Positions 13,301-22,912 of a stretch of DNA of 64,000 nt are shown here, one piece after another. Both the position numbers and the translations under genes were made by a program. Position 1 is the stretch's first letter. Each line of letters begins with the position of its first letter. The notes under the pieces were generated by a model, which saw only the letters and a list, made by a program, of their open reading frames with translations, was not told the origin of the DNA and made no database searches. This DNA comes from Fonticula alba ATCC 38817. Lineage: Eukaryota; Protista; Nucleariida. The DNA is taken from assembly GCA_000388065.2 (NCBI GenBank), contig KB932201.1. One strand, 5' to 3'.

Positions 13301-16300
13301 TGTTTCCCCGGGCGACATGCCGGCCGGCCCCAACCGCAGCACACACCAGGAACGGGGGCGGGGGATTGGAAAACCGGACAAAAGGCCCATATTTAATCCC
13401 GCCTGTTTGTGTGCATTTCTCCCCGGATTTCGGAGGCACGCGCTGGTGCGGGGAGGGGGGGCGGGGGGGCCTTTTCGCCCGGTCTCTCATCCCCCCGCCT
13501 CGCTCGCGCCGATCTGGCCGGATTCTCCGGCTCTGGAGGGCCCATCCGGGCCGGCCGTGCACCGAGCCCGGATCCTCCCTCTGGTCCGAGCCTCTGCGAT
13601 GAATCATAAGGCCTCTGTTCGCCGAAAAAGGTCCGACTCTGGGTAGGGGGGGGGGGAGACCGAGCGGCACCCTCAAGTGTCGTACACCTCCAGTACGGCC
13701 TCAGGGGGGGGGGGGGAGGGGGGGATGCGCCCTCTACCCCTGCGTATGGTGTCTGAGGGCCGACCGCCAACTGCTCCGGCTGGCGAGGGCGAGAAAGGGC
13801 GCGCGCGCGCGAGAATGAGAGAGAGAGAGGGAGAGGCCGGGGGAATGGGGGCCATGGGCTGAGCGAGGGCCGGCGCGCCGCGGGGGCTTTTCTTCCCTTT
13901 CGGCAGCATTGCCGCCGTGGCCTCGCGGCCTGAGCAACCACGCCCCCTGTGTGGTGGCCGTGTGCTGGAAGCCGCGAGAGGAGGCGCGCCGGGCCGGCCG
14001 GCAGGCCGAGGCAGCGAGGTGGATCCGGCTGGGGGCCGCCGGAGGGCCGCACACTTGCGATCAGGGCACGGCCGCGCGCCCCTCGCTCCCCCTCGTTCTC
14101 CCCCCCCCCCCCCCCGGGGCGGGGGGGGGGGCCGGGACAGCGGGGGGCCGGGCCCCCCCCCCCACGTGCTCACACATGTATACGCGCGCGTGCGAGCGCA
14201 TGTGTCGGGCGTGTGGGTCCGGGGCGGCGGGCCCCCGGTCACACCGGGGCAAAGCTCCCGGCATGGTCCGCGAGGCCCCTGCCCCGGTGCCACCGGCGGG
14301 GAGGGGGGGGGGGGGGGGGGAGGGGCTGCAACGGCGCGAGTCATGTCGTCTGGCGAATGCCCCTCCCGGGGGCCTGTTCCGGAGGATGCCGAAAACAACG
14401 CGCGCCCGAGCCGGACCCCACACGGATGGCGAACGTCCACCCGCCGAACCGGTCGGCCTCCCTGCCCACTTCCGGGCGGGGGGGGTGGGCCGGGGGCCGG
14501 GCGTCGTGCACGCAGACACATCAGTCCAGGGCGATCATCCTCTGTGCAGTGTACCTGCCTCCATTTGCTCTCCCCCGCCCCTCCCCCCCCCCGCCGGAAT
14601 ACTCGCCCGCGCCGTTTCAGTGCCTTGCCCTGCGCACCCTCCACTGGCTCGGCTGCGTGGGGGGCCTGCCGGGGGGGGGGGGGGGCGAGGCGGCGGGTGG
14701 GCCCAGCCGGGCCGGAGCTGGCCCATGTTGGGTCGGGTCAATGACGCCCAGGGGCGGCGGGGCTCCCTAGCATGCGGTTGTTCTGTCCGACTGCGCGGCC
14801 GATTGTCAGCCTCGTCTCCCCCCTCGGCGCCCGGTGGAGGCCCTTCGGTGCATGTCGTGCGGTGTGAGGCGCCTTGCAGGTTCCCGGCGGCGCAGGCGGC
14901 GAGCCGCGGGCCCACCTGCGGCATTATTTCCCATGGATCCGGCGCCACCCTCCCCCCTCGATTGGCGCGCGCGAGAGCGAGAGCGAGAGCGAGAGACACC
15001 CAGGGAGGGCGGGGGAGGGCAAGCACCCACCCCGACACTCGGCGTGTCAGCGGAGGCGAGACAGCCCCGGGGCGGTGTCCACAGCTTGATTCCTCTTTGA
15101 CTGGGCGGGCACCCTTCCGCCCGTACCCCACTCGATCGCCCCCTCCCCCCCCCCCCCCCGCCCATCGTCGACCTTAGGCGCCAGGGCGGCGACATTCGAC
15201 CACGGCTCCTGCCCGCGTGTCTTCGTCGCCTTCGGTGACCGAGGGGGCCAGGGGGGGGATGGCGCTTTGGCGAGGGGACTTCGGGGCCGTGGTGCCCAGA
15301 CCTGAGTGCGGGCGATCGGGACGTGCGACTGCGTGGAGGATCCTGCCCGTGTCGCCCGGTTCTGGGACACCCGCGGGCAACAGCATGTATTGCCTCTCGG
15401 CGGGGGGGGGGGGGGCACCCTCTGTTGTTTACCGAATCCCCCCCCCCCCCTTGGCCCTTGCCCTCGGGGCCCAGGTGTCGATCTGGTTCCGGGGGCGTCC
15501 ATCCAGCGATCAAGGCCGGCCTTGGGCGTCTGGCTGGGCGCACATGCGCGCCCGCGCGCGCACGCCCGCGCGCTCGCCCCACGTTTCCTCGGTCCTGAAT
15601 TTGGCAGCGCACCATGTCGCCGGGTATTGTGTCGGGCGGGCTGCTCCCACGGGAGCCCGCCCGCCCGCCCGGAGGGTGCCTCCGCACCCACGCGCGCGCG
15701 CGCGCACACTCAGGCAGCCCATTGTATATTGTTTCGCTGCATGTTTGCCCGATGAGCGCCCCGGCTGCCGTGCGAAGGGGGAAGGTGTGCCCCTTGCGGG
15801 CCCCGTGCATGCCGATTGTGTTCGGTCTGCCGCCCGGCCGCGGCGGCTGACAAACGCACCGAGGGCCCCGGAGCCGACGCCCGGGTCGCAGGGCCCCTGT
15901 GTGACTAGCCGCGCGGGTCTACCTCCTCTTCGCGGGGCCCAGGTGGCAAGGCTCAGGTCCGAATGCGTGCAGGGTTGGCGGGGGGGCGGCGGTGCGGCCG
16001 AGGCGACCACGGACCCGGGGGTGCACCTCCACCCACACATCCACACCCACTGCCTCCGCTGGACATCCGGCACATCAAAGGCACCCCACCTGACCGCCCT
16101 TCGCCCTCGCCTGAGGCCAGGACAACGATCCCTCCCCCCCTCCCCCCCTCNNNNNNNNNNNNNNNNNNNNNNNNNNNNNNNNNNNNNNNNNNNNNNNNNN
16201 NNNNNNNNNNNNNNNNNNNNNNNNNNNNNNNNNNNNNNNNNNNNNNNNNNNNNNNNNNNNNNNNNNNNNNNNNNNNNNNNNNNNNNNNNNNNNNNNNNNN

Positions 16301-16718
16301 NNNNNNNNNNNNNNNNNNNNNNNNNNNNNNNNNNNNNNNNNNNNNNNNNNNNNNNNNNNNNNNNNNNNNNNNNNNNNNNNNNNNNNNNNNNNNNNNNNNN
16401 NNNNNNNNNNNNNNNNNNNNNNNNNNNNNNNNNNNNNNNNNNNNNNNNNNNNNNNNNNNNNNNNNNNNNNNNNNNNNNNNNNNNNNNNNNNNNNNNNNNN
16501 NNNNNNNNNNNNNNNNNNNNNNNNNNNNNNNNNNNNNNNNNNNNNNNNNNNNNNNNNNNNNNNNNNNNNNNNNNNNNNNNNNNNNNNNNNNNNNNNNNNN
16601 NNNNNNNNNNNNNNNNNNNNNNNNNNNNNNNNNNNNNNNNNNNNNNNNNNNNNCCCCCCCCCGCCCTCCTTGCCGCTCCCCCATGCTCTGTCCTCCCACG
16701 GCCGACATCCCAAAGACC

Positions 16719-19700
16719 ATGGCGGCCCCGACCAAGAGCACTCTCGTCACATACAGCCGTCGTGGCCCGCGCACGGTGGCCTACTTTAATCAGTCCGCCC
16801 CGACTGGCAATGCGTCGCTCTGGACCCCACGACGTGCGGGCATCTCGGCCGGCGATGCATCCCGGTCGCCGGCCTCCAGCTTCGGCGCCGGGGCCTTTCG
16901 CGGCGCCGCGGCCCTGACCGGTGTGGACCTGCACCGGAGCGCTTCGGCCGACTCGCTGGACTCCCTGATGACCAGTCGCAGCAACCGCAGCACCGACTCC
17001 CCCAGCAGCAGCAGCTACGAGGACTCGGACTCGGACATCTCCTCGGACAGTGGCCTGTCAGATGGCGAGTCGGACGGCGAGTCGGACAGCGGCTCCGACT
17101 CCGATGAGGTCATGGACCTGGCGGGGCCGTCGACCCCACCGCCGGCGGTGGCCTCACGCGCCCATCAGCAGTCCTTCCTGCCATCGCAGCCGGGCTCCCG
17201 GGCCACGGCGGCCGGGTCTCCGGATGACGCGCATCTGCAGCAGCTCCTGCTGGCCGGCCTGCTGCCGGCATCATTGAGCCCCGGGCAACTGGCCGATCGC
17301 CGGCGCATTGTCCTCGCCTCATCGCCCATGGTCCGGCGCCTGAGCAGCTCGGTGGCCCTGGCCGGTGCGGCGTCCTCCCCGCTGATGGCTCCCCACTCGC
17401 CCGGAGCAGCCATGTCTCCGCGTGGGGTGCGCGTGGACTTGGCCACCGGCGGCGGCTTGGCCCTCACCTCGCCGACACTGAATGCCCCCTCCCTGTCGGC
17501 GCCCCTGTCGCCGGCGGCGGCCCTGCGCAATCCGCATCTGGCCGTGTCGGCCGGGCGCATCGTCGAAATCCATCCTCAACCCACCTCCGGCAGCATGAAG
17601 ACCGCCTTCGGCACGCCGAGTGCTTCGCGCCGGCGGCCGGCTCCCGCCGGACCGGCTGTCGGTGGCCCACGTCGTGCCTCGGCCTTGCCGCTGTCCTCCC
17701 TGCTGGAGGTATCCCACTCGTCTCCGGTGTCGCTGCTTCTGGCCACCGGGCCGGACCATGGCCAGGGCACCCTCCTTTCCGATGGGGGGGAGGACCACCC
17801 GGAGGCCGCCGGCCCCGAGGACCGGATCCCGGCCAGCAGCTTCGGAATCAATCTTGCCAGCCAGCCGGCCAGTGCCAGTGCCTCGAGTGACTCGCTGGGC
17901 CCGGGTCCGGGCCCGGGCCCGGGCCCGGGCTTGTCAGCCCTGCGTCCGCGTGGCAGCGTCGTCTTGCCGAATGCCCCGGTTGGCGGCGGGTCGGAAACCC
18001 TCACCCGGTCATCCTCCTTCTCGGCGTTGAGTCACTTTGCTCGGGCCGTGGCCCCGGCCGGGGTGGCCCAGCCGGCGCCCCTGCGCCCGACCTCCCCCGC
18101 CACCCGGCGTCCTGGTGACCCGGAGTCCGAGGATGAATTCAGCTTCGAGGAGGCCCTCAATGCCATTGTCCTCAAGCAGCAGCAGCAGGAGCGCGAAACG
18201 CGCGAGCGCCGGCAAGCGGCCAAGCCCCAGCGCCGGCCCAGTCGCCTGCGTGGCAGTCGCCGGGGCAAGGGCTCCGCCACGCCGGCGGCCCCCTCGGCCG
18301 AGGGTGCCGCCCTGCGCAGTGACACCGGCCTGGTCTTCGACTTCCGGCCGGAGCCCGTCATGTCCCTGGAGGAGGCCCTCGGCATGGGGCCGGTTGATGA
18401 CTCTTCCGATGACGAGCTTGTCTCGACCGCCAGCTCAAGCCACAGTGCCAGCTCCGCGGGCTACTTTTCGCGGATCTGGCGCATGGCCACCGGCTCCAGC
18501 CACGGCCATGGCAAGCAGCGTGGCAGTGGCGGTGACGCTGGTCGTGGCCCGCATGCGACTGGCTCTCATCGGTCCTCCTCCGGGTCCGGGTCGACTCCGG
18601 GCCTGGCTCCGATTTCGGACCCCACCCTGGCGGCCCCCCCGGCGTTGGCCCCGATCTCGACATTGCCCTTGGCGGCCGGTCCCGTCTTGGAGATCCTCCC
18701 CCAAGCAGGCCACCAAGACCCCTCCTCGGTCCCGGGCTCGACCGACATGCACAGTCTGTCCCACCACACCGACGAGTCGTCCTTCGATCAGACGGACCCG
18801 CTCCTGTCGACGCAGGACTCGATCATGGAAATCCCCCTGAAGCTGGGCGCCGGGGATGGGGACCACATGTCGCCGGAAGCGGCCGCCGAGGCCGAGATCC
18901 AGGCGCGCGAGCTCCTGTCCCTGCGCGAGGCCCTTCGTATTGCGGTGGAAAACCCCTCGCAGGAGCACTCGGATATCCAGCTTCTGACCATCGGCGATGC
19001 GTTGTCGATTGTGGTTGACCAGCAGCAGCGCCAGTATTTGGCACAGAATGAGGATCGGCGGCAGCAGCGCCGCCGCGAGCGCGAGCTACTGGCCGCCCAT
19101 CGGCTGGGCGCCGAGTCGCCTGGCGGGCCGGCGACCGCTTCCGACGACGCTCCCTCGGCCCCGGGGTCGGAGCAGCTTCACCCCATCGACTTGACGGCCA
19201 CCGATGCCTCTGCCACTTCCAGCCAGGAGGAGTTCGACCCCCTGGCCACTGGCGACTCGTTGACCGAGGCCATTGTCACCGGGGCCGGTGTCGACCGGAC
19301 CGTGTGGACTCTGTACTCGGCCCTGCGGCTGTTTGCCTGGCGCCGAGGCCGGCGGCTGCTGGCCGAGGAGTTGGAGGACTCGATCCAGGCGTCGCGCTCG
19401 GCCGACTTTGCCGAAGCCCTGTCCCTCTCGGCGGAGCACCTGCCGCGGGATCACAGCCGCGAGCTCCTGTCCCTGCAGGAGATTCTCTTTGCCGGGCGCC
19501 TGTCGCCGGTTCCCTCGGGGACCGACCTGCCGGCTGCCGGGGAAGGGGCCGGCTTCCATCTCGAGGGGCCCGTGGATGATGTCCGCATTCGTCGGGCATC
19601 ATCCGGTGTGCTGTTGAGCTTCGAGGAGGCATTGAAGCTCAGTGTGGAGGAGCTTCGTCGGTCGGCGGTCCCCTCGCTCACCGGGTCCCCGAGCAATGGG

Positions 19701-20649
19701 GCTCGCGTGGGTGGCGGCTCGGTTGGGAGTGTGGCCGCCGCGCGCAGCCCCTCCGGCGAGTGGGCCCCCATCGCTCCTCGGCCCTTGGAGCTGGCCCCCT
19801 CCGGGTCTGGGACTCTCCGAAGCACCGACAGCAGCCAGTTGATTTCCCTGTCGGAGGCCCTGCTGTTGGCCGCCAGTCCGGGCCCCTCGCGCCGGCAGTC
19901 CATGATTTTGCCCGGCCAGCTGGACATCCTGGCACCTTTGAATTTCGACACGGTCCCGGCCGGCCCCGGTGCCCGCCCCGAGTCGGCTGTCGGCCCGTGG
20001 GCCAATGGCCCGCCGCCGGGCAAGGGCCCGAATCGTGCTGGGCCACACCCGCTGGCGCAGCAGGATGATGCGTCATCCGACCTGCTGGGCAGCACCGGCG
20101 GCAGCTCGCTCATGGACACCGATTCGTCGGACTACCTCATGTCGACGGCCCTCTCCTCGCAGTCGGCCATGGACCGGTATCTGGAAGACAGCATGGCCAC
20201 GTACCACCACTCGGTGGAGCCGGGCTCCTATGCCCACGATCATCACCTTCATCATCAGCCTGGTGGCCACCACCCGGGTGATGATGGCCACCATCCCGAG
20301 GGGTTGATGCTGGCGCCGGCCCCGGGTGCTGGGACTCCGGGCACCAGCCAGTCGCCACTTCTGTCGCTGGCGGATGCCCTGATGCTGGATTGCCCATCGC
20401 CGATGGATGTCGAGCCGCCGATGCTGGCGGCGCCGGTCGACAAGAAGCGCGCCGATGGCGGAGCCGCGGCCAGCAAGCGGTCGCGCTTCCGCTTCCCCTG
20501 GTCCAGCCACAAGCCGGCGACCACCACCGAGGCCAAGGCCTCGGGCGCCTCGGCACCGGCCATGGTTTCACAGTCCTCCTTCCCGCTCTTGGGTCCGGAG
20601 CCAGGGGCCGCTTCCTATTCGGAGGCGCTGCCCAGCATGGCCACCGAGC

Positions 20650-20700
<51 letters not shown>

Positions 20701-21194
20701 TCCTGCCACAGGGCAGCAAGGAGCCCGGCCCCGCGTCCGCGGTCACCGGCAACAGCCGCATGCGCCAGCTGCTGGAGAAGCGCAATGCCGAGGCACAGCT
20801 GGCTGCCGAGCGGGCCTCCGCCGCCTCCGAGGCCGAGTCCCGGCGGAACCTCACCGCCGTGACCCAGGCCCATCGCCAGGGGTTCCTGGTGGACAGCAGT
20901 GTGGACAATCTGCACCAGTTGGTCCAGGCGGCGCCGGCGGCGCCGGCTCCGGATCTGGCGCCGGCGGCGTCGGCGGCCGCACCAGCGGCGGCCGCGGTGC
21001 CGATCATGTCGCCGACCTTCATCCGGTCGGCCTCGGTTCCCACGGATTTGGCCAACCTGGATCTGGGGCACATTGTGAAGAGCGAGTACTCGGCCGAGGT
21101 TCGGCGCCAGCAAAGCCAGTTGGCATCGATGCTGGCCGCCGACGACGAGCATTCCACCTCGGCTCTGGCCCCGGCCCTGGCCCTCGGGAGTGGG

Positions 21195-21240
<46 letters not shown>

Positions 21241-22912
21241 TTTCGCCCGCTTTGCCGCCGATCCTGAATCCGGTGGTCGCGTCCCCGGCTCCGGCGAGCT
21301 TTATGCGCTCTCCGCGCCCGGCATTCTTCCCGGACCCGTCGACCCAGCAGGAGGGCCCGGCAGCGACGGCGGACCTGCGGTCGCTGTCGGAACTGCTGGC
21401 CCTTTGCGCCCAGTCGCGGCCGGTGTCCTTCAGTTCGGTGATTGGTGCAAATGCCCTTGGCCGGTGTACCAAGATCGGCGAGAGCACCTTTGCTGAGGTC
21501 TTCTCGCTGGCGTGCGATGTCCCGTGTGCTGGCCCGAAGGGCAGTGCCTGTACCGGGAGCGGTGTGGCCCCGCGGCCTCCCCCAGCCGGGGTTGTCCTGA
21601 AGATCGTGCCCTTCAACGTCGGCTCCTTGTCCGGCACGGAGGGCGAGGGGCTCTCGGCCAATGAGGTGTACCAGGAAATCCGCATCACCCAGCAGCTTTC
21701 CGGCCTGGGCACCTTGCGCCAGGGTGGCAGTCCCACCGGAGGGGCTGCTGGCCGGGCGGCGCACTTCGCTTGTACCGATTGCCTGCCGGCCGGACATCCG
21801 GATGCCGGGGCCTTTGTGGCGGATGCCGCTCTCCAGGGCCCGGTGTCGCCCGGGTCCGGTCGGGAGCGCCGGATTTACACCTCTTCCTTCGTGCGTCTCC
21901 TCGGGGCCGGCATCTGCCATGGTCCCTTCCCGACGGAGCTCCTGACCGCGTGGAATGCCTTCCGGACGGCTGAGCCGGCGCGCGCCGTCAATCCCTCGCC
22001 CGCCGGTCTGCCCGCATCGCAACTCTTCGCGGTGATTGTGCTCGAACACGGCGGGACCGATCTCGAGCACTGCATTCTCCCCTCGCGCGTGGCTGCTCGG
22101 TCGATCCTCTTCCAAATCTGCCTGTCCCTGGCTTCGGTGGAGGCCTCGCATCAGTTTGAGCATCGTGACCTCCACTGGGGCAATGTCCTGGTGACGGCAT
22201 CGACGCCGGCCGGGCGCCGGCCCTCACTGCCGATCCTCAGCAGTGACGTCGACTCGGCTCCCTTCATGTTGGATGGCAACCTGGTGTCCATCGAGAACCA
22301 TGGCGTCCGGGCGACCATCATCGATTACACCCTGTCGCGCATGTTCCACAAGGATGAGCTCCTCTTCGTGCAGCTCGATGATGAGTCCTACTTCGAGGGT
22401 CGTGGTGCGTGTGCTCTCCTACTCCCCGTCCCTCTCCCGGCGGCCTCTGTGCTACCTCCTCCCCCCCCCATTTTCCTCTTCCCATCTTCACTTCTTCCCA
22501 TCTTCACTTCTGCTCGCTCGCTGGCCACGCTGACCATCAGTGCCCTTCATTTCTCCCCCCCCCCCTCTCTGTCTCTATCTTTCTCCTCTCTTTCCCAGGC
22601 GACTATCAATTCGATGTATACCGCAAAATGCGCCAGCTGACAGACAACGAGTGGGCAGCCCATGTGCCGGCCACCAATGTCTACTGGGTCTACTACCTGG
22701 CCGATAAGCTGCTGAACAGCGTGAAGTACGCTCCTCGGCGTGGGGACCCCGAGCGTCGACGCCAAGATGCGGGTGAGCGCTCGGCCCTGGCCAGCTTCCT
22801 GAAGCGCGTCCGGTCCTACGAGTCAGTCGGCCAGTTGGTCCGGGACCACTACTTCGCGGACCTTGTCACGGATGTGGCCATGCTCAACCGCATGCTTGTT
22901 CGCTTCGACTAG
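16719..22912 (+). CDS. HASPIN: Haspin-family kinase with a very long disordered N-terminus (~1999 aa); exons 16719-22404, 22599-22912
   Basis: C-terminal domain has CTKIGESTFAEVF, VVLKIVP, FEHRDLHWGNVLV, IIDYTLSR, EGRGDYQFDVYRKMR and W..HVPATNVYWVYYL, which are diagnostic of haspin. Spliced CDS is 6000 nt. The start codon is inferred, as the gap at 16151-16653 lies just upstream. Confidence 0.92.
20651..20699 (+). repeat. (CAG)n polyglutamine tract in haspin; second tract at ~21197-21239
   Basis: Pure CAG runs encoding roughly 16 and 14 Gln. Confidence 0.95.

What the first reader, a model, noticed from the sequence alone, without database searches (positions are those of the whole stretch)
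18135..21406. About 10 dispersed copies of an LLS[LF]xEAL-type amphipathic helix motif in the haspin N-terminus
The otherwise low-complexity N-terminus repeatedly shows EFSFEEALNAI (~18135), VMSLEEALGM (~18358), LLSLREALRIA (~18912), LLTIGDALSIV (~18981), ADFAEALSLS (~19401), LLSLQEILFA (~19462), LLSFEEALKLS (~19610), LISLSEALLLA (~19840) and LLSLADALMLD (~20359). The kinase-proximal LRSLSELLALCAQ (~21374) matches the helix preceding the haspin kinase fold. The copies are not DNA tandem repeats, so the peptide motif itself appears to be maintained. It may be a multivalent docking or autoinhibitory short linear motif, or a phospho-switched S-x-x-E-A-L array; I know of no such array in described haspins.
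Basis: partly seen in the sequence, partly recalled or inferred. Interest (0 to 1): 0.7.

Follow-up and report, generated by a model that had tools for sequence, protein, structure and literature searches.

The report
Repeated helix-start peptide in haspin tail
The gene for the mitotic histone kinase haspin in a GC-rich amoeboid protist carries nine scattered copies of one 8-10-residue helix-starting peptide in its long regulatory tail; the array is real and looks selected, but what it binds is unknown.

Summary
Window 16719-22912 (+) encodes a haspin of about 1,999 aa in two exons. It has a canonical Pds5-interacting motif at residues 11-14 and a C-terminal haspin kinase domain. The roughly 1,540-aa N-terminus holds nine dispersed, in-frame copies of hydrophobic-hydrophobic-S/T-hydrophobic-x-D/E-A-L. 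Seven fit a strict pattern and two a relaxed one.

- **Enrichment:** six strict-regex hits were observed against 0.005 expected. An unbiased pattern search recovered the same motif.
- **Origin:** flanks are unrelated except for traces of old internal duplications, and synonymous codons differ. The peptide is what is conserved, not the DNA.
- **Uniqueness:** no array was found in about 148 other haspins. Among 1.84 billion representative proteins, only giant plectin-repeat proteins matched, and only over the repeat core.
- **Nature of the core:** all nine copies have a helix capping box (S/T/D-x-x-E/D). AlphaFold2 puts six or seven of the nine copies in helices.
- **Tenth copy:** the kinase-proximal "copy" is the conserved pre-kinase helix of haspins and matches the motif only weakly.

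The most likely reading is a lineage-specific, multivalent docking or self-association element. The partner is untested, and UIM, SIM, NES and B56 readings each fit only some copies. No close orthologue and no RNA data could be obtained. The scan had not reported this before.

The parts
16719..22404 (+). haspin exon 1 (1,895 codons plus 1 base): N-terminal regulatory region and most of the kinase domain
   Evidence: Open frame. GC3 is the highest codon position in every 300-nt block. Pfam Haspin_kinase E 9.7e-28. The start is supported by the N-terminal PIM position shared with other haspins. An assembly gap lies just upstream at 16151-16653.
22405..22598 (+). intron (194 nt, GTGCGT...CAG, CT-rich)
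   Evidence: Inferred from sequence and from the conserved G-x-G-D-Y-Q-F-D junction in haspin alignments.
22599..22912 (+). haspin exon 2 (end of the kinase domain, stop at 22910-22912)
   Evidence: Pfam Haspin_kinase profile 277-320, E 7.9e-14. ORF end.
16749..16760 (+). Pds5-interacting-motif-like T-Y-S-R (residues 11-14)
   Evidence: The same motif class lies near the N-terminus in 62 of 148 haspins. The PIM consensus is quoted in PMC8198109.
18135..18167 (+). copy m1 (core FSFEEAL), relaxed member
   Evidence: An AF2 helix starts right after the Ser, pLDDT about 86.
18357..18389 (+). copy m2 (core VMSLEEAL)
   Evidence: Not helical in AF2.
18912..18944 (+). copy m3 (core LLSLREAL)
   Evidence: Inside the helix at residues 719-744. 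Leave-one-out score 18.3 bits.
18981..19013 (+). copy m4 (core LLTIGDAL)
   Evidence: Inside the helix at residues 748-797, pLDDT up to 94.
19398..19430 (+). copy m5 (core DFAEAL), relaxed member with Asp as the cap residue
   Evidence: Helix at residues 896-906.
19464..19496 (+). copy m6 (core LLSLQEIL)
   Evidence: Helix at residues 910-926. The m5-m6 module aligns in register with m3-m4.
19611..19643 (+). copy m7 (core LLSFEEAL)
   Evidence: The helix starts right after the Ser and is preceded by short predicted strands. Leave-one-out score 23.4 bits.
19839..19871 (+). copy m8 (core LISLSEAL)
   Evidence: Only a very low-confidence short helix. Its flanks align with those of m9 over about 45 residues.
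20358..20390 (+). copy m9 (core LLSLADAL)
   Evidence: Not helical in AF2.
21375..21413 (+). pre-kinase helix (LLxxCxQ element), a weak motif look-alike
   Evidence: Conserved across haspins. pLDDT 76-95. Lies within the range aligned to 2wb8 residues 450 onward. Motif score is only 6-8 bits.
21420..21443 (+). P-h-S-F-x-x-h-h element 18 residues before the glycine-rich loop
   Evidence: Aligned to human haspin PVPFSHCL in PDB chains. In many haspins this element reads P-h-[ST]-F-x-E-h-L and is motif-like. The window's own copy is degenerate, at -7.5 bits.

Best explanation
The nine copies are paralogous remnants of old internal duplications in the regulatory N-terminus of a bona fide haspin. 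Everything has drifted except an 8-10-residue core, which is kept by selection on the peptide.

The core is a helix-start signature. It has two hydrophobic residues, then an N-cap Ser/Thr/Asp paired with an acidic residue three positions later (a capping box), then Ala-Leu and a further hydrophobic residue.

I infer that each copy is a short, foldable 'sticker'. It would bind a hydrophobic groove on a partner protein, or on another copy, so that the array gives multivalent (avidity-based) docking or compaction of the haspin tail. The cap Ser sits in an S-x-x-D/E context that CK2-type kinases could phosphorylate to tune binding.

Shown here: existence, enrichment, peptide-level conservation, helix-start character and lineage restriction. 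Inferred: binding, multivalency and phospho-control.
For: - Enrichment is more than 1,000-fold over shuffles, and the motif was recovered without prior knowledge of it.
- All copies are codon-aligned on one strand, and Ser and Leu codons differ between copies.
- Flank alignments point to duplication followed by divergence. The m3-m4 and m5-m6 modules align in register over 39 residues (z 4.3). The flanks of m8 and m9 align over about 45 residues (z 5.4). m1 and m7 align with z 5.6.
- The capping box is present in 9 of 9 copies.
- AF2 starts helices immediately after the Ser in m1 and m7. It puts m3-m6 in helices, with m3/m4 and m5/m6 as adjacent helix-turn-helix pairs.
- The motif is essentially absent from other haspin N-termini: 5 hits in 86,698 residues and never two in one protein, against 8 in 1,560 residues here.
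- Known haspin regulation works through short elements in this same tail, namely the PIM, SIMs and HBIS (PMC8198109; PMC4915188; PMC5743930).
Against: - There is no binding, expression or phosphorylation data.
- No orthologue was found, so conservation between species is untested.
- m2, m8 and m9 are not confidently helical and are weakly amphipathic.
- Part of the array (residues 719-982) may belong to a folded helical region rather than to a disordered tail.
- AF2 gave no rise in confidence for m7-m9 when the kinase domain was present, so no docking onto the kinase was suggested. This is weak evidence, because contacts were not available.
Confidence: 0.5

Rival explanations
1. The copies are structural repeat units rather than docking motifs. 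They would be degenerate strand-cap-helix units related to, or convergent with, the core of plectin/plakin repeats, or simply the signature of a folded helical-repeat region.
For: - The motif profile's only significant hits among 1.84 billion proteins are plectin-repeat giants.
- hhalign of the motif profile against a plectin-repeat profile gives probability 84.5% and score 22.4. Column-permuted controls reach at most 12.0.
- An independent plectin HMM scores the tail at 14.8 bits, against a shuffle maximum of 3.2.
- AF2 draws short strands before the m7 helix, and a confident helical hairpin through m3-m4.
Against: - Pfam Plectin gives no hit even at E 10.
- Per-copy scores are only 1-3 bits and cover the core only.
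- Spacing is 22-185 residues, not 38 in tandem.
- The plakin match was selected post hoc from the whole library, so its P of about 7e-6 is borderline after correction.
- m2, m8 and m9 sit in Pro/Gly/Ser-rich sequence with no predicted fold.
Confidence: 0.17
2. The copies mimic the conserved pre-kinase helix (or the P-h-S-F-x-E-h-L element) of the haspin kinase domain. They would bind the kinase domain in cis as decoys, giving multi-copy autoinhibition that mitotic phosphorylation relieves.
For: - Across 145 haspins, the 70 residues before the glycine-rich loop are more motif-like than other tail windows (P 5e-17). The peaks lie at -18 and -34.
- In the closest metagenomic relative (L030) and in cnidarian-type haspins, the -34 helix reads h-S-h-x-D/E-h-L.
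- Autoinhibition of haspin by its tail is established (PMC5743930).
Against: - The window's own pre-kinase helix scores 6-8 bits and its -18 element scores -7.5 bits, against 22-30 bits for the copies.
- The known inhibitory segment is basic, not acidic-hydrophobic.
- AF2 with the kinase domain present gave no confidence gain for m7-m9.
Confidence: 0.1
3. The copies are SUMO- or ubiquitin-binding elements (SIM- or UIM-like). They would tether haspin to poly-SUMOylated or ubiquitinated chromatin proteins such as topoisomerase II.
For: - The first four residues fit the SIM core h-h-x-h in 5 of 9 copies, followed by acidic residues.
- Xenopus haspin uses two SIMs 21 residues apart (PMC4915188), similar to the 22-23-residue spacing of m3-m4 and m5-m6.
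- m5 and m7 fit the UIM core.
Against: - The best-conserved positions (Ala-Leu and the following hydrophobic residue) lie outside a SIM and favour a helix, whereas SIMs bind as strands.
- The residues are Leu-rich rather than Val/Ile-rich.
- The UIM acidic run is present in 0 of 9 copies and the full UIM core in 2 of 9.
- Pfam gives no UIM hit at E 10.
Confidence: 0.08
4. The copies are CRM1-type nuclear export signals that keep haspin out of the nucleus in interphase.
For: Six of nine copies fit h-x2-h-x3-h-x-h. I recall this pattern as NES class 1d.
Against: - The pattern is very permissive and fits many amphipathic helices.
- The conserved Ser, acidic residue and Ala are not NES features.
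- Six to nine export signals in one protein would be unusual.
- Three copies fail the pattern.
Confidence: 0.06
5. The array is a by-product of composition, codon bias or chance, with no function.
For: - The tail is rich in L, S, A and E.
- Strong GC3 bias raises DNA identity between identical peptides.
- Several copies are individually unremarkable in leave-one-out scoring.
Against: - 0 of 5,000 shuffles reach the observed counts, including shuffles within 50- or 100-residue blocks.
- The family-wise pattern test gives 7 copies against a maximum of 3.
- Other haspin tails have about 90-fold fewer hits per residue.
Confidence: 0.03

Closest known systems
Plectin/plakin repeat (Pfam PF00681), core ...G-x-x-h-S-h-x-E-A-h-x-x-G-L-h-D
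   Same: Both share the strand end, Ser cap, acidic residue at cap+3, Ala and a following hydrophobic residue. Profile-profile probability is 84.5% over 26 columns.
   Different: There is no Pfam hit and no 38-residue tandem period. The D-P-x-T-G hairpin and the G-L-h-D half are not conserved, and per-copy scores are 1-3 bits. The resemblance is best read as a shared helix-start solution, not membership.
Pre-kinase helix of haspin kinase domains (h-h-x-x-C-x-Q, about 34 residues before the glycine-rich loop) and the P-h-S-F-x-E-h-L element at -18
   Same: In this lineage and some others these elements read h-S-h-x-D/E-h-L. They are the most motif-like part of other haspins.
   Different: They are single, structurally fixed parts of the kinase fold. 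The nine copies lie 330-1,080 residues upstream and score far higher against their own profile.
Known short elements of haspin tails: Pds5-interacting motif, SIMs (VICL/VLCL in Xenopus), basic inhibitory segment HBIS
   Same: They sit in the same region of the protein and follow the same logic: short peptides in a divergent tail that control localisation or activity. The PIM itself is present here.
   Different: The sequence class is different, and none of these elements is known as a nine-copy array.
Ubiquitin-interacting motif (UIM)
   Same: The h-x-x-A-h-x-x-S helix core is seen in m5 and m7.
   Different: The acidic N-terminal run is absent in all copies, Ser is kept in only 2 of 9, and Pfam gives no hit.
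PP2A-B56 LxxIxE and CRM1 NES patterns
   Same: The regular expressions match 3 of 9 and 6 of 9 copies respectively.
   Different: The best-conserved positions of the motif are not those of either class. The patterns were recalled from memory, and they are permissive.

Membership tests
Haspin kinase (the gene as a whole) | Match to Pfam Haspin_kinase PF12330 above the curated cut-off | tested here: met
   97.7 bits for exon 1 and 51.9 bits for exon 2, against a cut-off of 25.
Haspin kinase (the gene as a whole) | Haspin-type kinase fold | tested here: met
   AF2 model against 2wb8: Z 22.2, rmsd 3.0, 245 aligned. The next non-haspin kinase has Z 13. Sequence hits to eight haspin PDB sequences have E about 3e-27.
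Haspin kinase (the gene as a whole) | N-terminal Pds5-interacting motif ([K/P]-[S/T]-Y-[S/T/G]-[K/R]) | tested here: met
   T-Y-S-R at residues 11-14. The first position is V rather than K/P. The placement matches 62 of 148 haspins.
Plectin repeat (PF00681) | Match to the family profile | tested here: not met
   No Pfam hit at E 0.01 on the exon or at E 10 on 35-residue segments. My own HMM of 280 repeats gives 1-3 bits per copy.
Plectin repeat (PF00681) | About 38-residue units in tandem | tested here: not met
   Start-to-start spacing is 74, 185, 23, 139, 22, 49, 76 and 173 residues.
Plectin repeat (PF00681) | Profile-profile similarity beyond chance | tested here: inconclusive
   hhalign 84.5%, score 22.4 against a permuted maximum of 12.0. 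The target family was chosen post hoc.
Ubiquitin-interacting motif | Acidic run followed by h-x-x-A-h-x-x-S-x-x-acidic | tested here: not met
   The acidic run is present in 0 of 9 copies and the core in 2 of 9. Pfam gives no hit.
SUMO-interacting motif | h-h-x-h core (V/I/L) with an acidic flank, binding SUMO as a strand | tested here: inconclusive
   The core is present in 5 of 9 copies. Binding cannot be tested here, and the conserved Ala-Leu lies outside the SIM.
CRM1 nuclear export signal | h-x2-h-x3-h-x-h spacing and export activity | tested here: inconclusive
   The spacing is present in 6 of 9 copies. Export activity cannot be tested with these tools.
PP2A-B56 LxxIxE motif | [LMFYWIC]-x-x-[IVLWC]-x-E | tested here: not met
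   3 of 9 copies.
Helix capping box | S/T/D at the N-cap and E/D three residues later, at the start of a helix | tested here: met
   The pattern is present in 9 of 9 copies. AF2 helices begin directly after the Ser in m1 and m7. In m3, m4 and m6 the predicted helix runs through the site.

The most novel reading that the evidence does not exclude
The nine copies are decoys of the lineage's own pre-kinase helix, or partners for each other. Together they would fold the 1,500-residue tail back on the kinase domain, or zip tails together. This would be a multi-copy, phosphorylation-tunable switch or condensate driver that sets haspin activity and clustering at centromeres. No haspin has been described with such a regulatory design.
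Probability: 0.1. Interest if true: 0.6.

Novelty: new variant of a known kind. Interest (0 to 1): 0.36.

Why it matters
Haspin tails are described as divergent and unstructured, and they are regulated through a few short elements: the Pds5-binding motif, SIMs and a basic inhibitory segment. This protein has a clear case of a different element multiplied nine times and kept while the rest of the tail drifted. That gives a concrete peptide to test for the partner or self-interaction that positions or restrains haspin in an early-branching relative of fungi. It is also a clean example of how a capping-box helix start can become a reusable module. The practical value is limited, because the organism is not a genetic model and no relatives could be compared.

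Tried and rejected
- **Orthologue searches.** Word-based protein searches used the kinase region in two length classes and the motif region. The nearest kinase domains are about 30% identical and belong to early-diverging fungi. Nothing matched the tail, and the protein itself is not in the libraries.
- **Motif profile search.** The profile was run against 1.84 billion representative proteins. It gave five weak hits: four plectin-repeat giants from metagenomes and one unrelated 222-aa protein.
- **Metagenome scan.** The best locus, L030, is 55% identical, but its contig starts inside the kinase region. No locus carries an array.
- **Pfam on 35-residue segments at E 10.** No UIM, Plectin or other relevant hit.
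- **ESM Atlas look-alikes of residues 715-990.** Nothing usable.
- **Repeated patterns in other haspin tails.** Only recent tandem repeats were found.
- **Structure prediction with the 54-row alignment A2.** Those rows were not sent anywhere else. Alignment A3 used only rows that preceded the first flagged one.
- **Papers.** The two original haspin structure papers are not held.

Full report
**Gene and setting.** The window is GC-rich (about 0.62-0.74), contains assembly gaps and has eukaryotic gene structure.

- A 5.7-kb open frame on the + strand runs from an ATG at 16719 to a GTGCGT donor at 22405. A CT-rich 194-nt intron ends in CAG at 22598, and a second exon runs to the stop at 22910-22912.
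- GC3 is the highest codon position in all 300-nt blocks of exon 1, so the whole stretch reads as coding.
- Both exons match Pfam Haspin_kinase, at 97.7 and 51.9 bits. The exon-1 part also matches human haspin chains in the PDB with E about 3e-27.
- An AlphaFold2 model of exon-1 residues 700-1895 superposes on the human haspin crystal structure 2wb8. The fit is Z 22.2, rmsd 3.0 Å and 245 residues. Other kinases score Z 13 or less.
- Residues 11-14 read T-Y-S-R. This is the Pds5-interacting motif that 62 of 148 other haspins carry at the same N-terminal position (consensus from PMC8198109). It supports the chosen start codon, although a 503-N gap lies just upstream.
- The exons were analysed separately throughout.
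- An earlier agent's note names the genome as Fonticula alba. I did not verify that. My own evidence is only that the nearest kinase domains are from early-diverging fungi at about 30% identity.

- The strict pattern (two hydrophobics, S/T, hydrophobic, x, D/E, A, L) occurs six times in the 1,560-residue tail. The expectation is 0.003-0.005 in 5,000 global, 100-residue-block or 50-residue-block shuffles.
- The shorter [ST]-h-x-[DE]-[AI]-L pattern occurs eight times, against about 0.1 expected.
- To avoid judging a pattern chosen after the fact, I enumerated all 6-of-8 patterns in a reduced alphabet. The top pattern was this motif with seven copies. The best pattern in any of 200 local shuffles had at most three copies.
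- A motif score matrix separates the nine copies (22-30 bits, self-trained) from everything else in the protein (9 bits or less).
- In harsh leave-one-out scoring only m3 and m7 are individually outstanding, so the significance is collective.

**Peptide, not DNA.**

- The only tandem repeats in the gene are two CAG runs, a GGGCCC run and a short intron repeat.
- The repeat finder did detect the copies, but only as 20-32-nt matches of 75-92% identity confined to the core.
- A 20-nt consensus with three mismatches hits six times in the 64-kb window, against 0.68 expected. All six hits lie in this gene, on this strand and codon-aligned.
- Ser is encoded by AGC, TCC and TCG, and Leu by four different codons. 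In-register flanks are about 30% identical, which is the random level.
- The flanks still keep traces of common descent. The two-copy modules m3-m4 and m5-m6 align in register over 39 residues (z 4.3). The surroundings of m8 and m9 align over about 45 residues (z 5.4). m1 and m7 align with z 5.6.
- The simplest history is old internal duplication followed by drift of everything but the core. That history is the signature of selection on the peptide.

**What the core is.**

- Every copy has S, T or D followed three residues later by E or D. This is the classical helix capping box (9 of 9; the concept comes from general knowledge of helix N-caps).
- Ala-Leu follows in 8 of 9 copies, and a further hydrophobic residue two positions later in most.
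- Single-sequence AlphaFold2 of residues 440-1260 predicts helices at m1, m3, m4, m5, m6 and m7. In m1 and m7 the helix begins directly after the Ser.
- The second model, which used a shallow nine-sequence alignment, repeats this result. It adds a very low-confidence helix at m8 and short strands before m7.
- m3/m4 and m5/m6 are neighbouring helices joined by Pro-containing turns. The m3-m4 hairpin reaches pLDDT 70-94 in both runs.
- m2 and m9 are not helical. m2, m8 and m9 have low hydrophobic moments and are followed by Gly/Pro.
- 'Amphipathic helix' therefore fits about two thirds of the copies. The common denominator is a helix start of two turns.

**Is it a haspin feature?** No.

- In the tails of about 148 other haspins (86,698 residues) the six-residue pattern occurs five times, and never twice in one protein. 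That is about 90-fold rarer per residue than here.
- The repeated patterns found in other haspin tails are recent tandem repeats of unrelated sequence.
- The tail has no detectable homologue.
- The closest environmental relative (L030, 55% identity, same K-I-G-E-S-T-F-A-E-V-F loop) is a contig that starts inside the kinase region.

**The kinase-proximal 'copy'.**

- The segment at 21375-21413 is the conserved pre-kinase helix of haspins, with pattern h-h-x-x-C-x-Q.
- It is predicted with pLDDT 76-95. It lies within the range that aligns to residues 450 onward of 2wb8.
- It scores only 6-8 bits against the motif matrix, so it is a look-alike rather than a member.
- Across 145 haspins, the 70 residues before the glycine-rich loop are significantly more motif-like than other tail windows (P 5e-17). 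The peaks are at the -18 element (P-h-S-F-x-E-h-L) and the -34 helix.
- In L030 and in some cnidarian-type haspins the -34 helix reads h-S-h-x-D/E-h-L.
- This keeps a decoy or autoinhibition reading alive. Against it, the AlphaFold2 run that contained both the kinase domain and m3-m9 gave no confidence gain for m7-m9. Contacts could not be inspected.

**Comparison with known motifs.**

- A profile of the nine copies was searched against 1.84 billion representative proteins. It found five weak hits (E 1e-5 to 2e-4). Four are 1,729-4,924-residue proteins from metagenomes, packed with Pfam Plectin repeats.
- The core of those repeats has the same strand end, Ser cap, acidic residue and Ala arrangement.
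- hhalign of the motif profile against 33 such repeats gives 84.5% probability and score 22.4, while 200 column permutations reach at most 12.0.
- An independent HMM of 280 repeats scores the tail at 14.8 bits, against a shuffle maximum of 3.2.
- Several results argue against homology. Pfam Plectin does not hit. Per-copy scores are 1-3 bits and restricted to the core. The spacing is irregular. The family was picked post hoc from the whole library.
- I therefore read the plectin match as the same helix-start solution, with homology unproven.
- UIM fits 2 of 9 cores and 0 of 9 acidic runs. The SIM core fits 5 of 9 copies. An NES spacing fits 6 of 9, and B56 fits 3 of 9.
- None of these classes explains the best-conserved positions.

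**Verdict.** It is lineage-restricted as far as can be seen, and it looks maintained at the peptide level.

- Its most likely role is a multivalent docking or self-association element in the regulatory tail of haspin, possibly tuned by phosphorylation of the cap Ser. Confidence in that general reading is about 0.5.
- The partner and effect are unknown.
- It is a new variant within a known kind (short functional elements in haspin tails), of moderate interest.

Noticed in passing
window 16749-16760: A T-Y-S-R Pds5-interacting-motif-like peptide lies at residues 11-14 of the haspin, at the same N-terminal position as in many animal and fungal haspins.
   Followed up: partly
window 18873-19109 (exon-1 residues about 719-797): A long helical hairpin containing m3 and m4 is predicted with pLDDT up to 94 even from a single sequence. 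Part of the 'disordered' tail may therefore be folded or form a coiled coil.
   Followed up: partly
window 21520-22050: The kinase N-lobe carries long low-confidence insertions (model residues about 903-923 and 967-1021). This explains why Pfam matches only profile positions 154-277 in exon 1.
   Followed up: no
window 20647-20699 and 21196-21240; 17897-17930: Two CAG runs encode poly-Gln tracts of about 15-18 residues in the tail. A GGGCCC run encodes a Gly-Pro repeat.
   Followed up: no
window 20568-22175 (- strand) and other frames: Long antisense and off-frame ORFs (up to 535 aa) overlap the gene. They are the expected by-product of 70% GC and are not genes.
   Followed up: no
window 16151-16653: A 503-N assembly gap lies 65 nt upstream of the proposed start codon. 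The frame stays open across it, so the 5' end rests on homology only.
   Followed up: partly
L030:3-1100: A metagenomic contig (ERZ778028 assembly, 2,240 nt) encodes the closest haspin kinase domain found (55% identity, with introns). Its pre-kinase helix reads D-L-S-L-D-D-L-L-E-L-C-E-Q, and the contig ends before the tail.
   Followed up: partly
P0063-P0066 (metagenome proteins): These giant proteins of 1,729-4,924 residues consist of dozens of Pfam Plectin repeats. They come from ENA, Logan and JGI metagenome assemblies, on contigs of 9-136 kb, and their organism is unknown.
   Followed up: no
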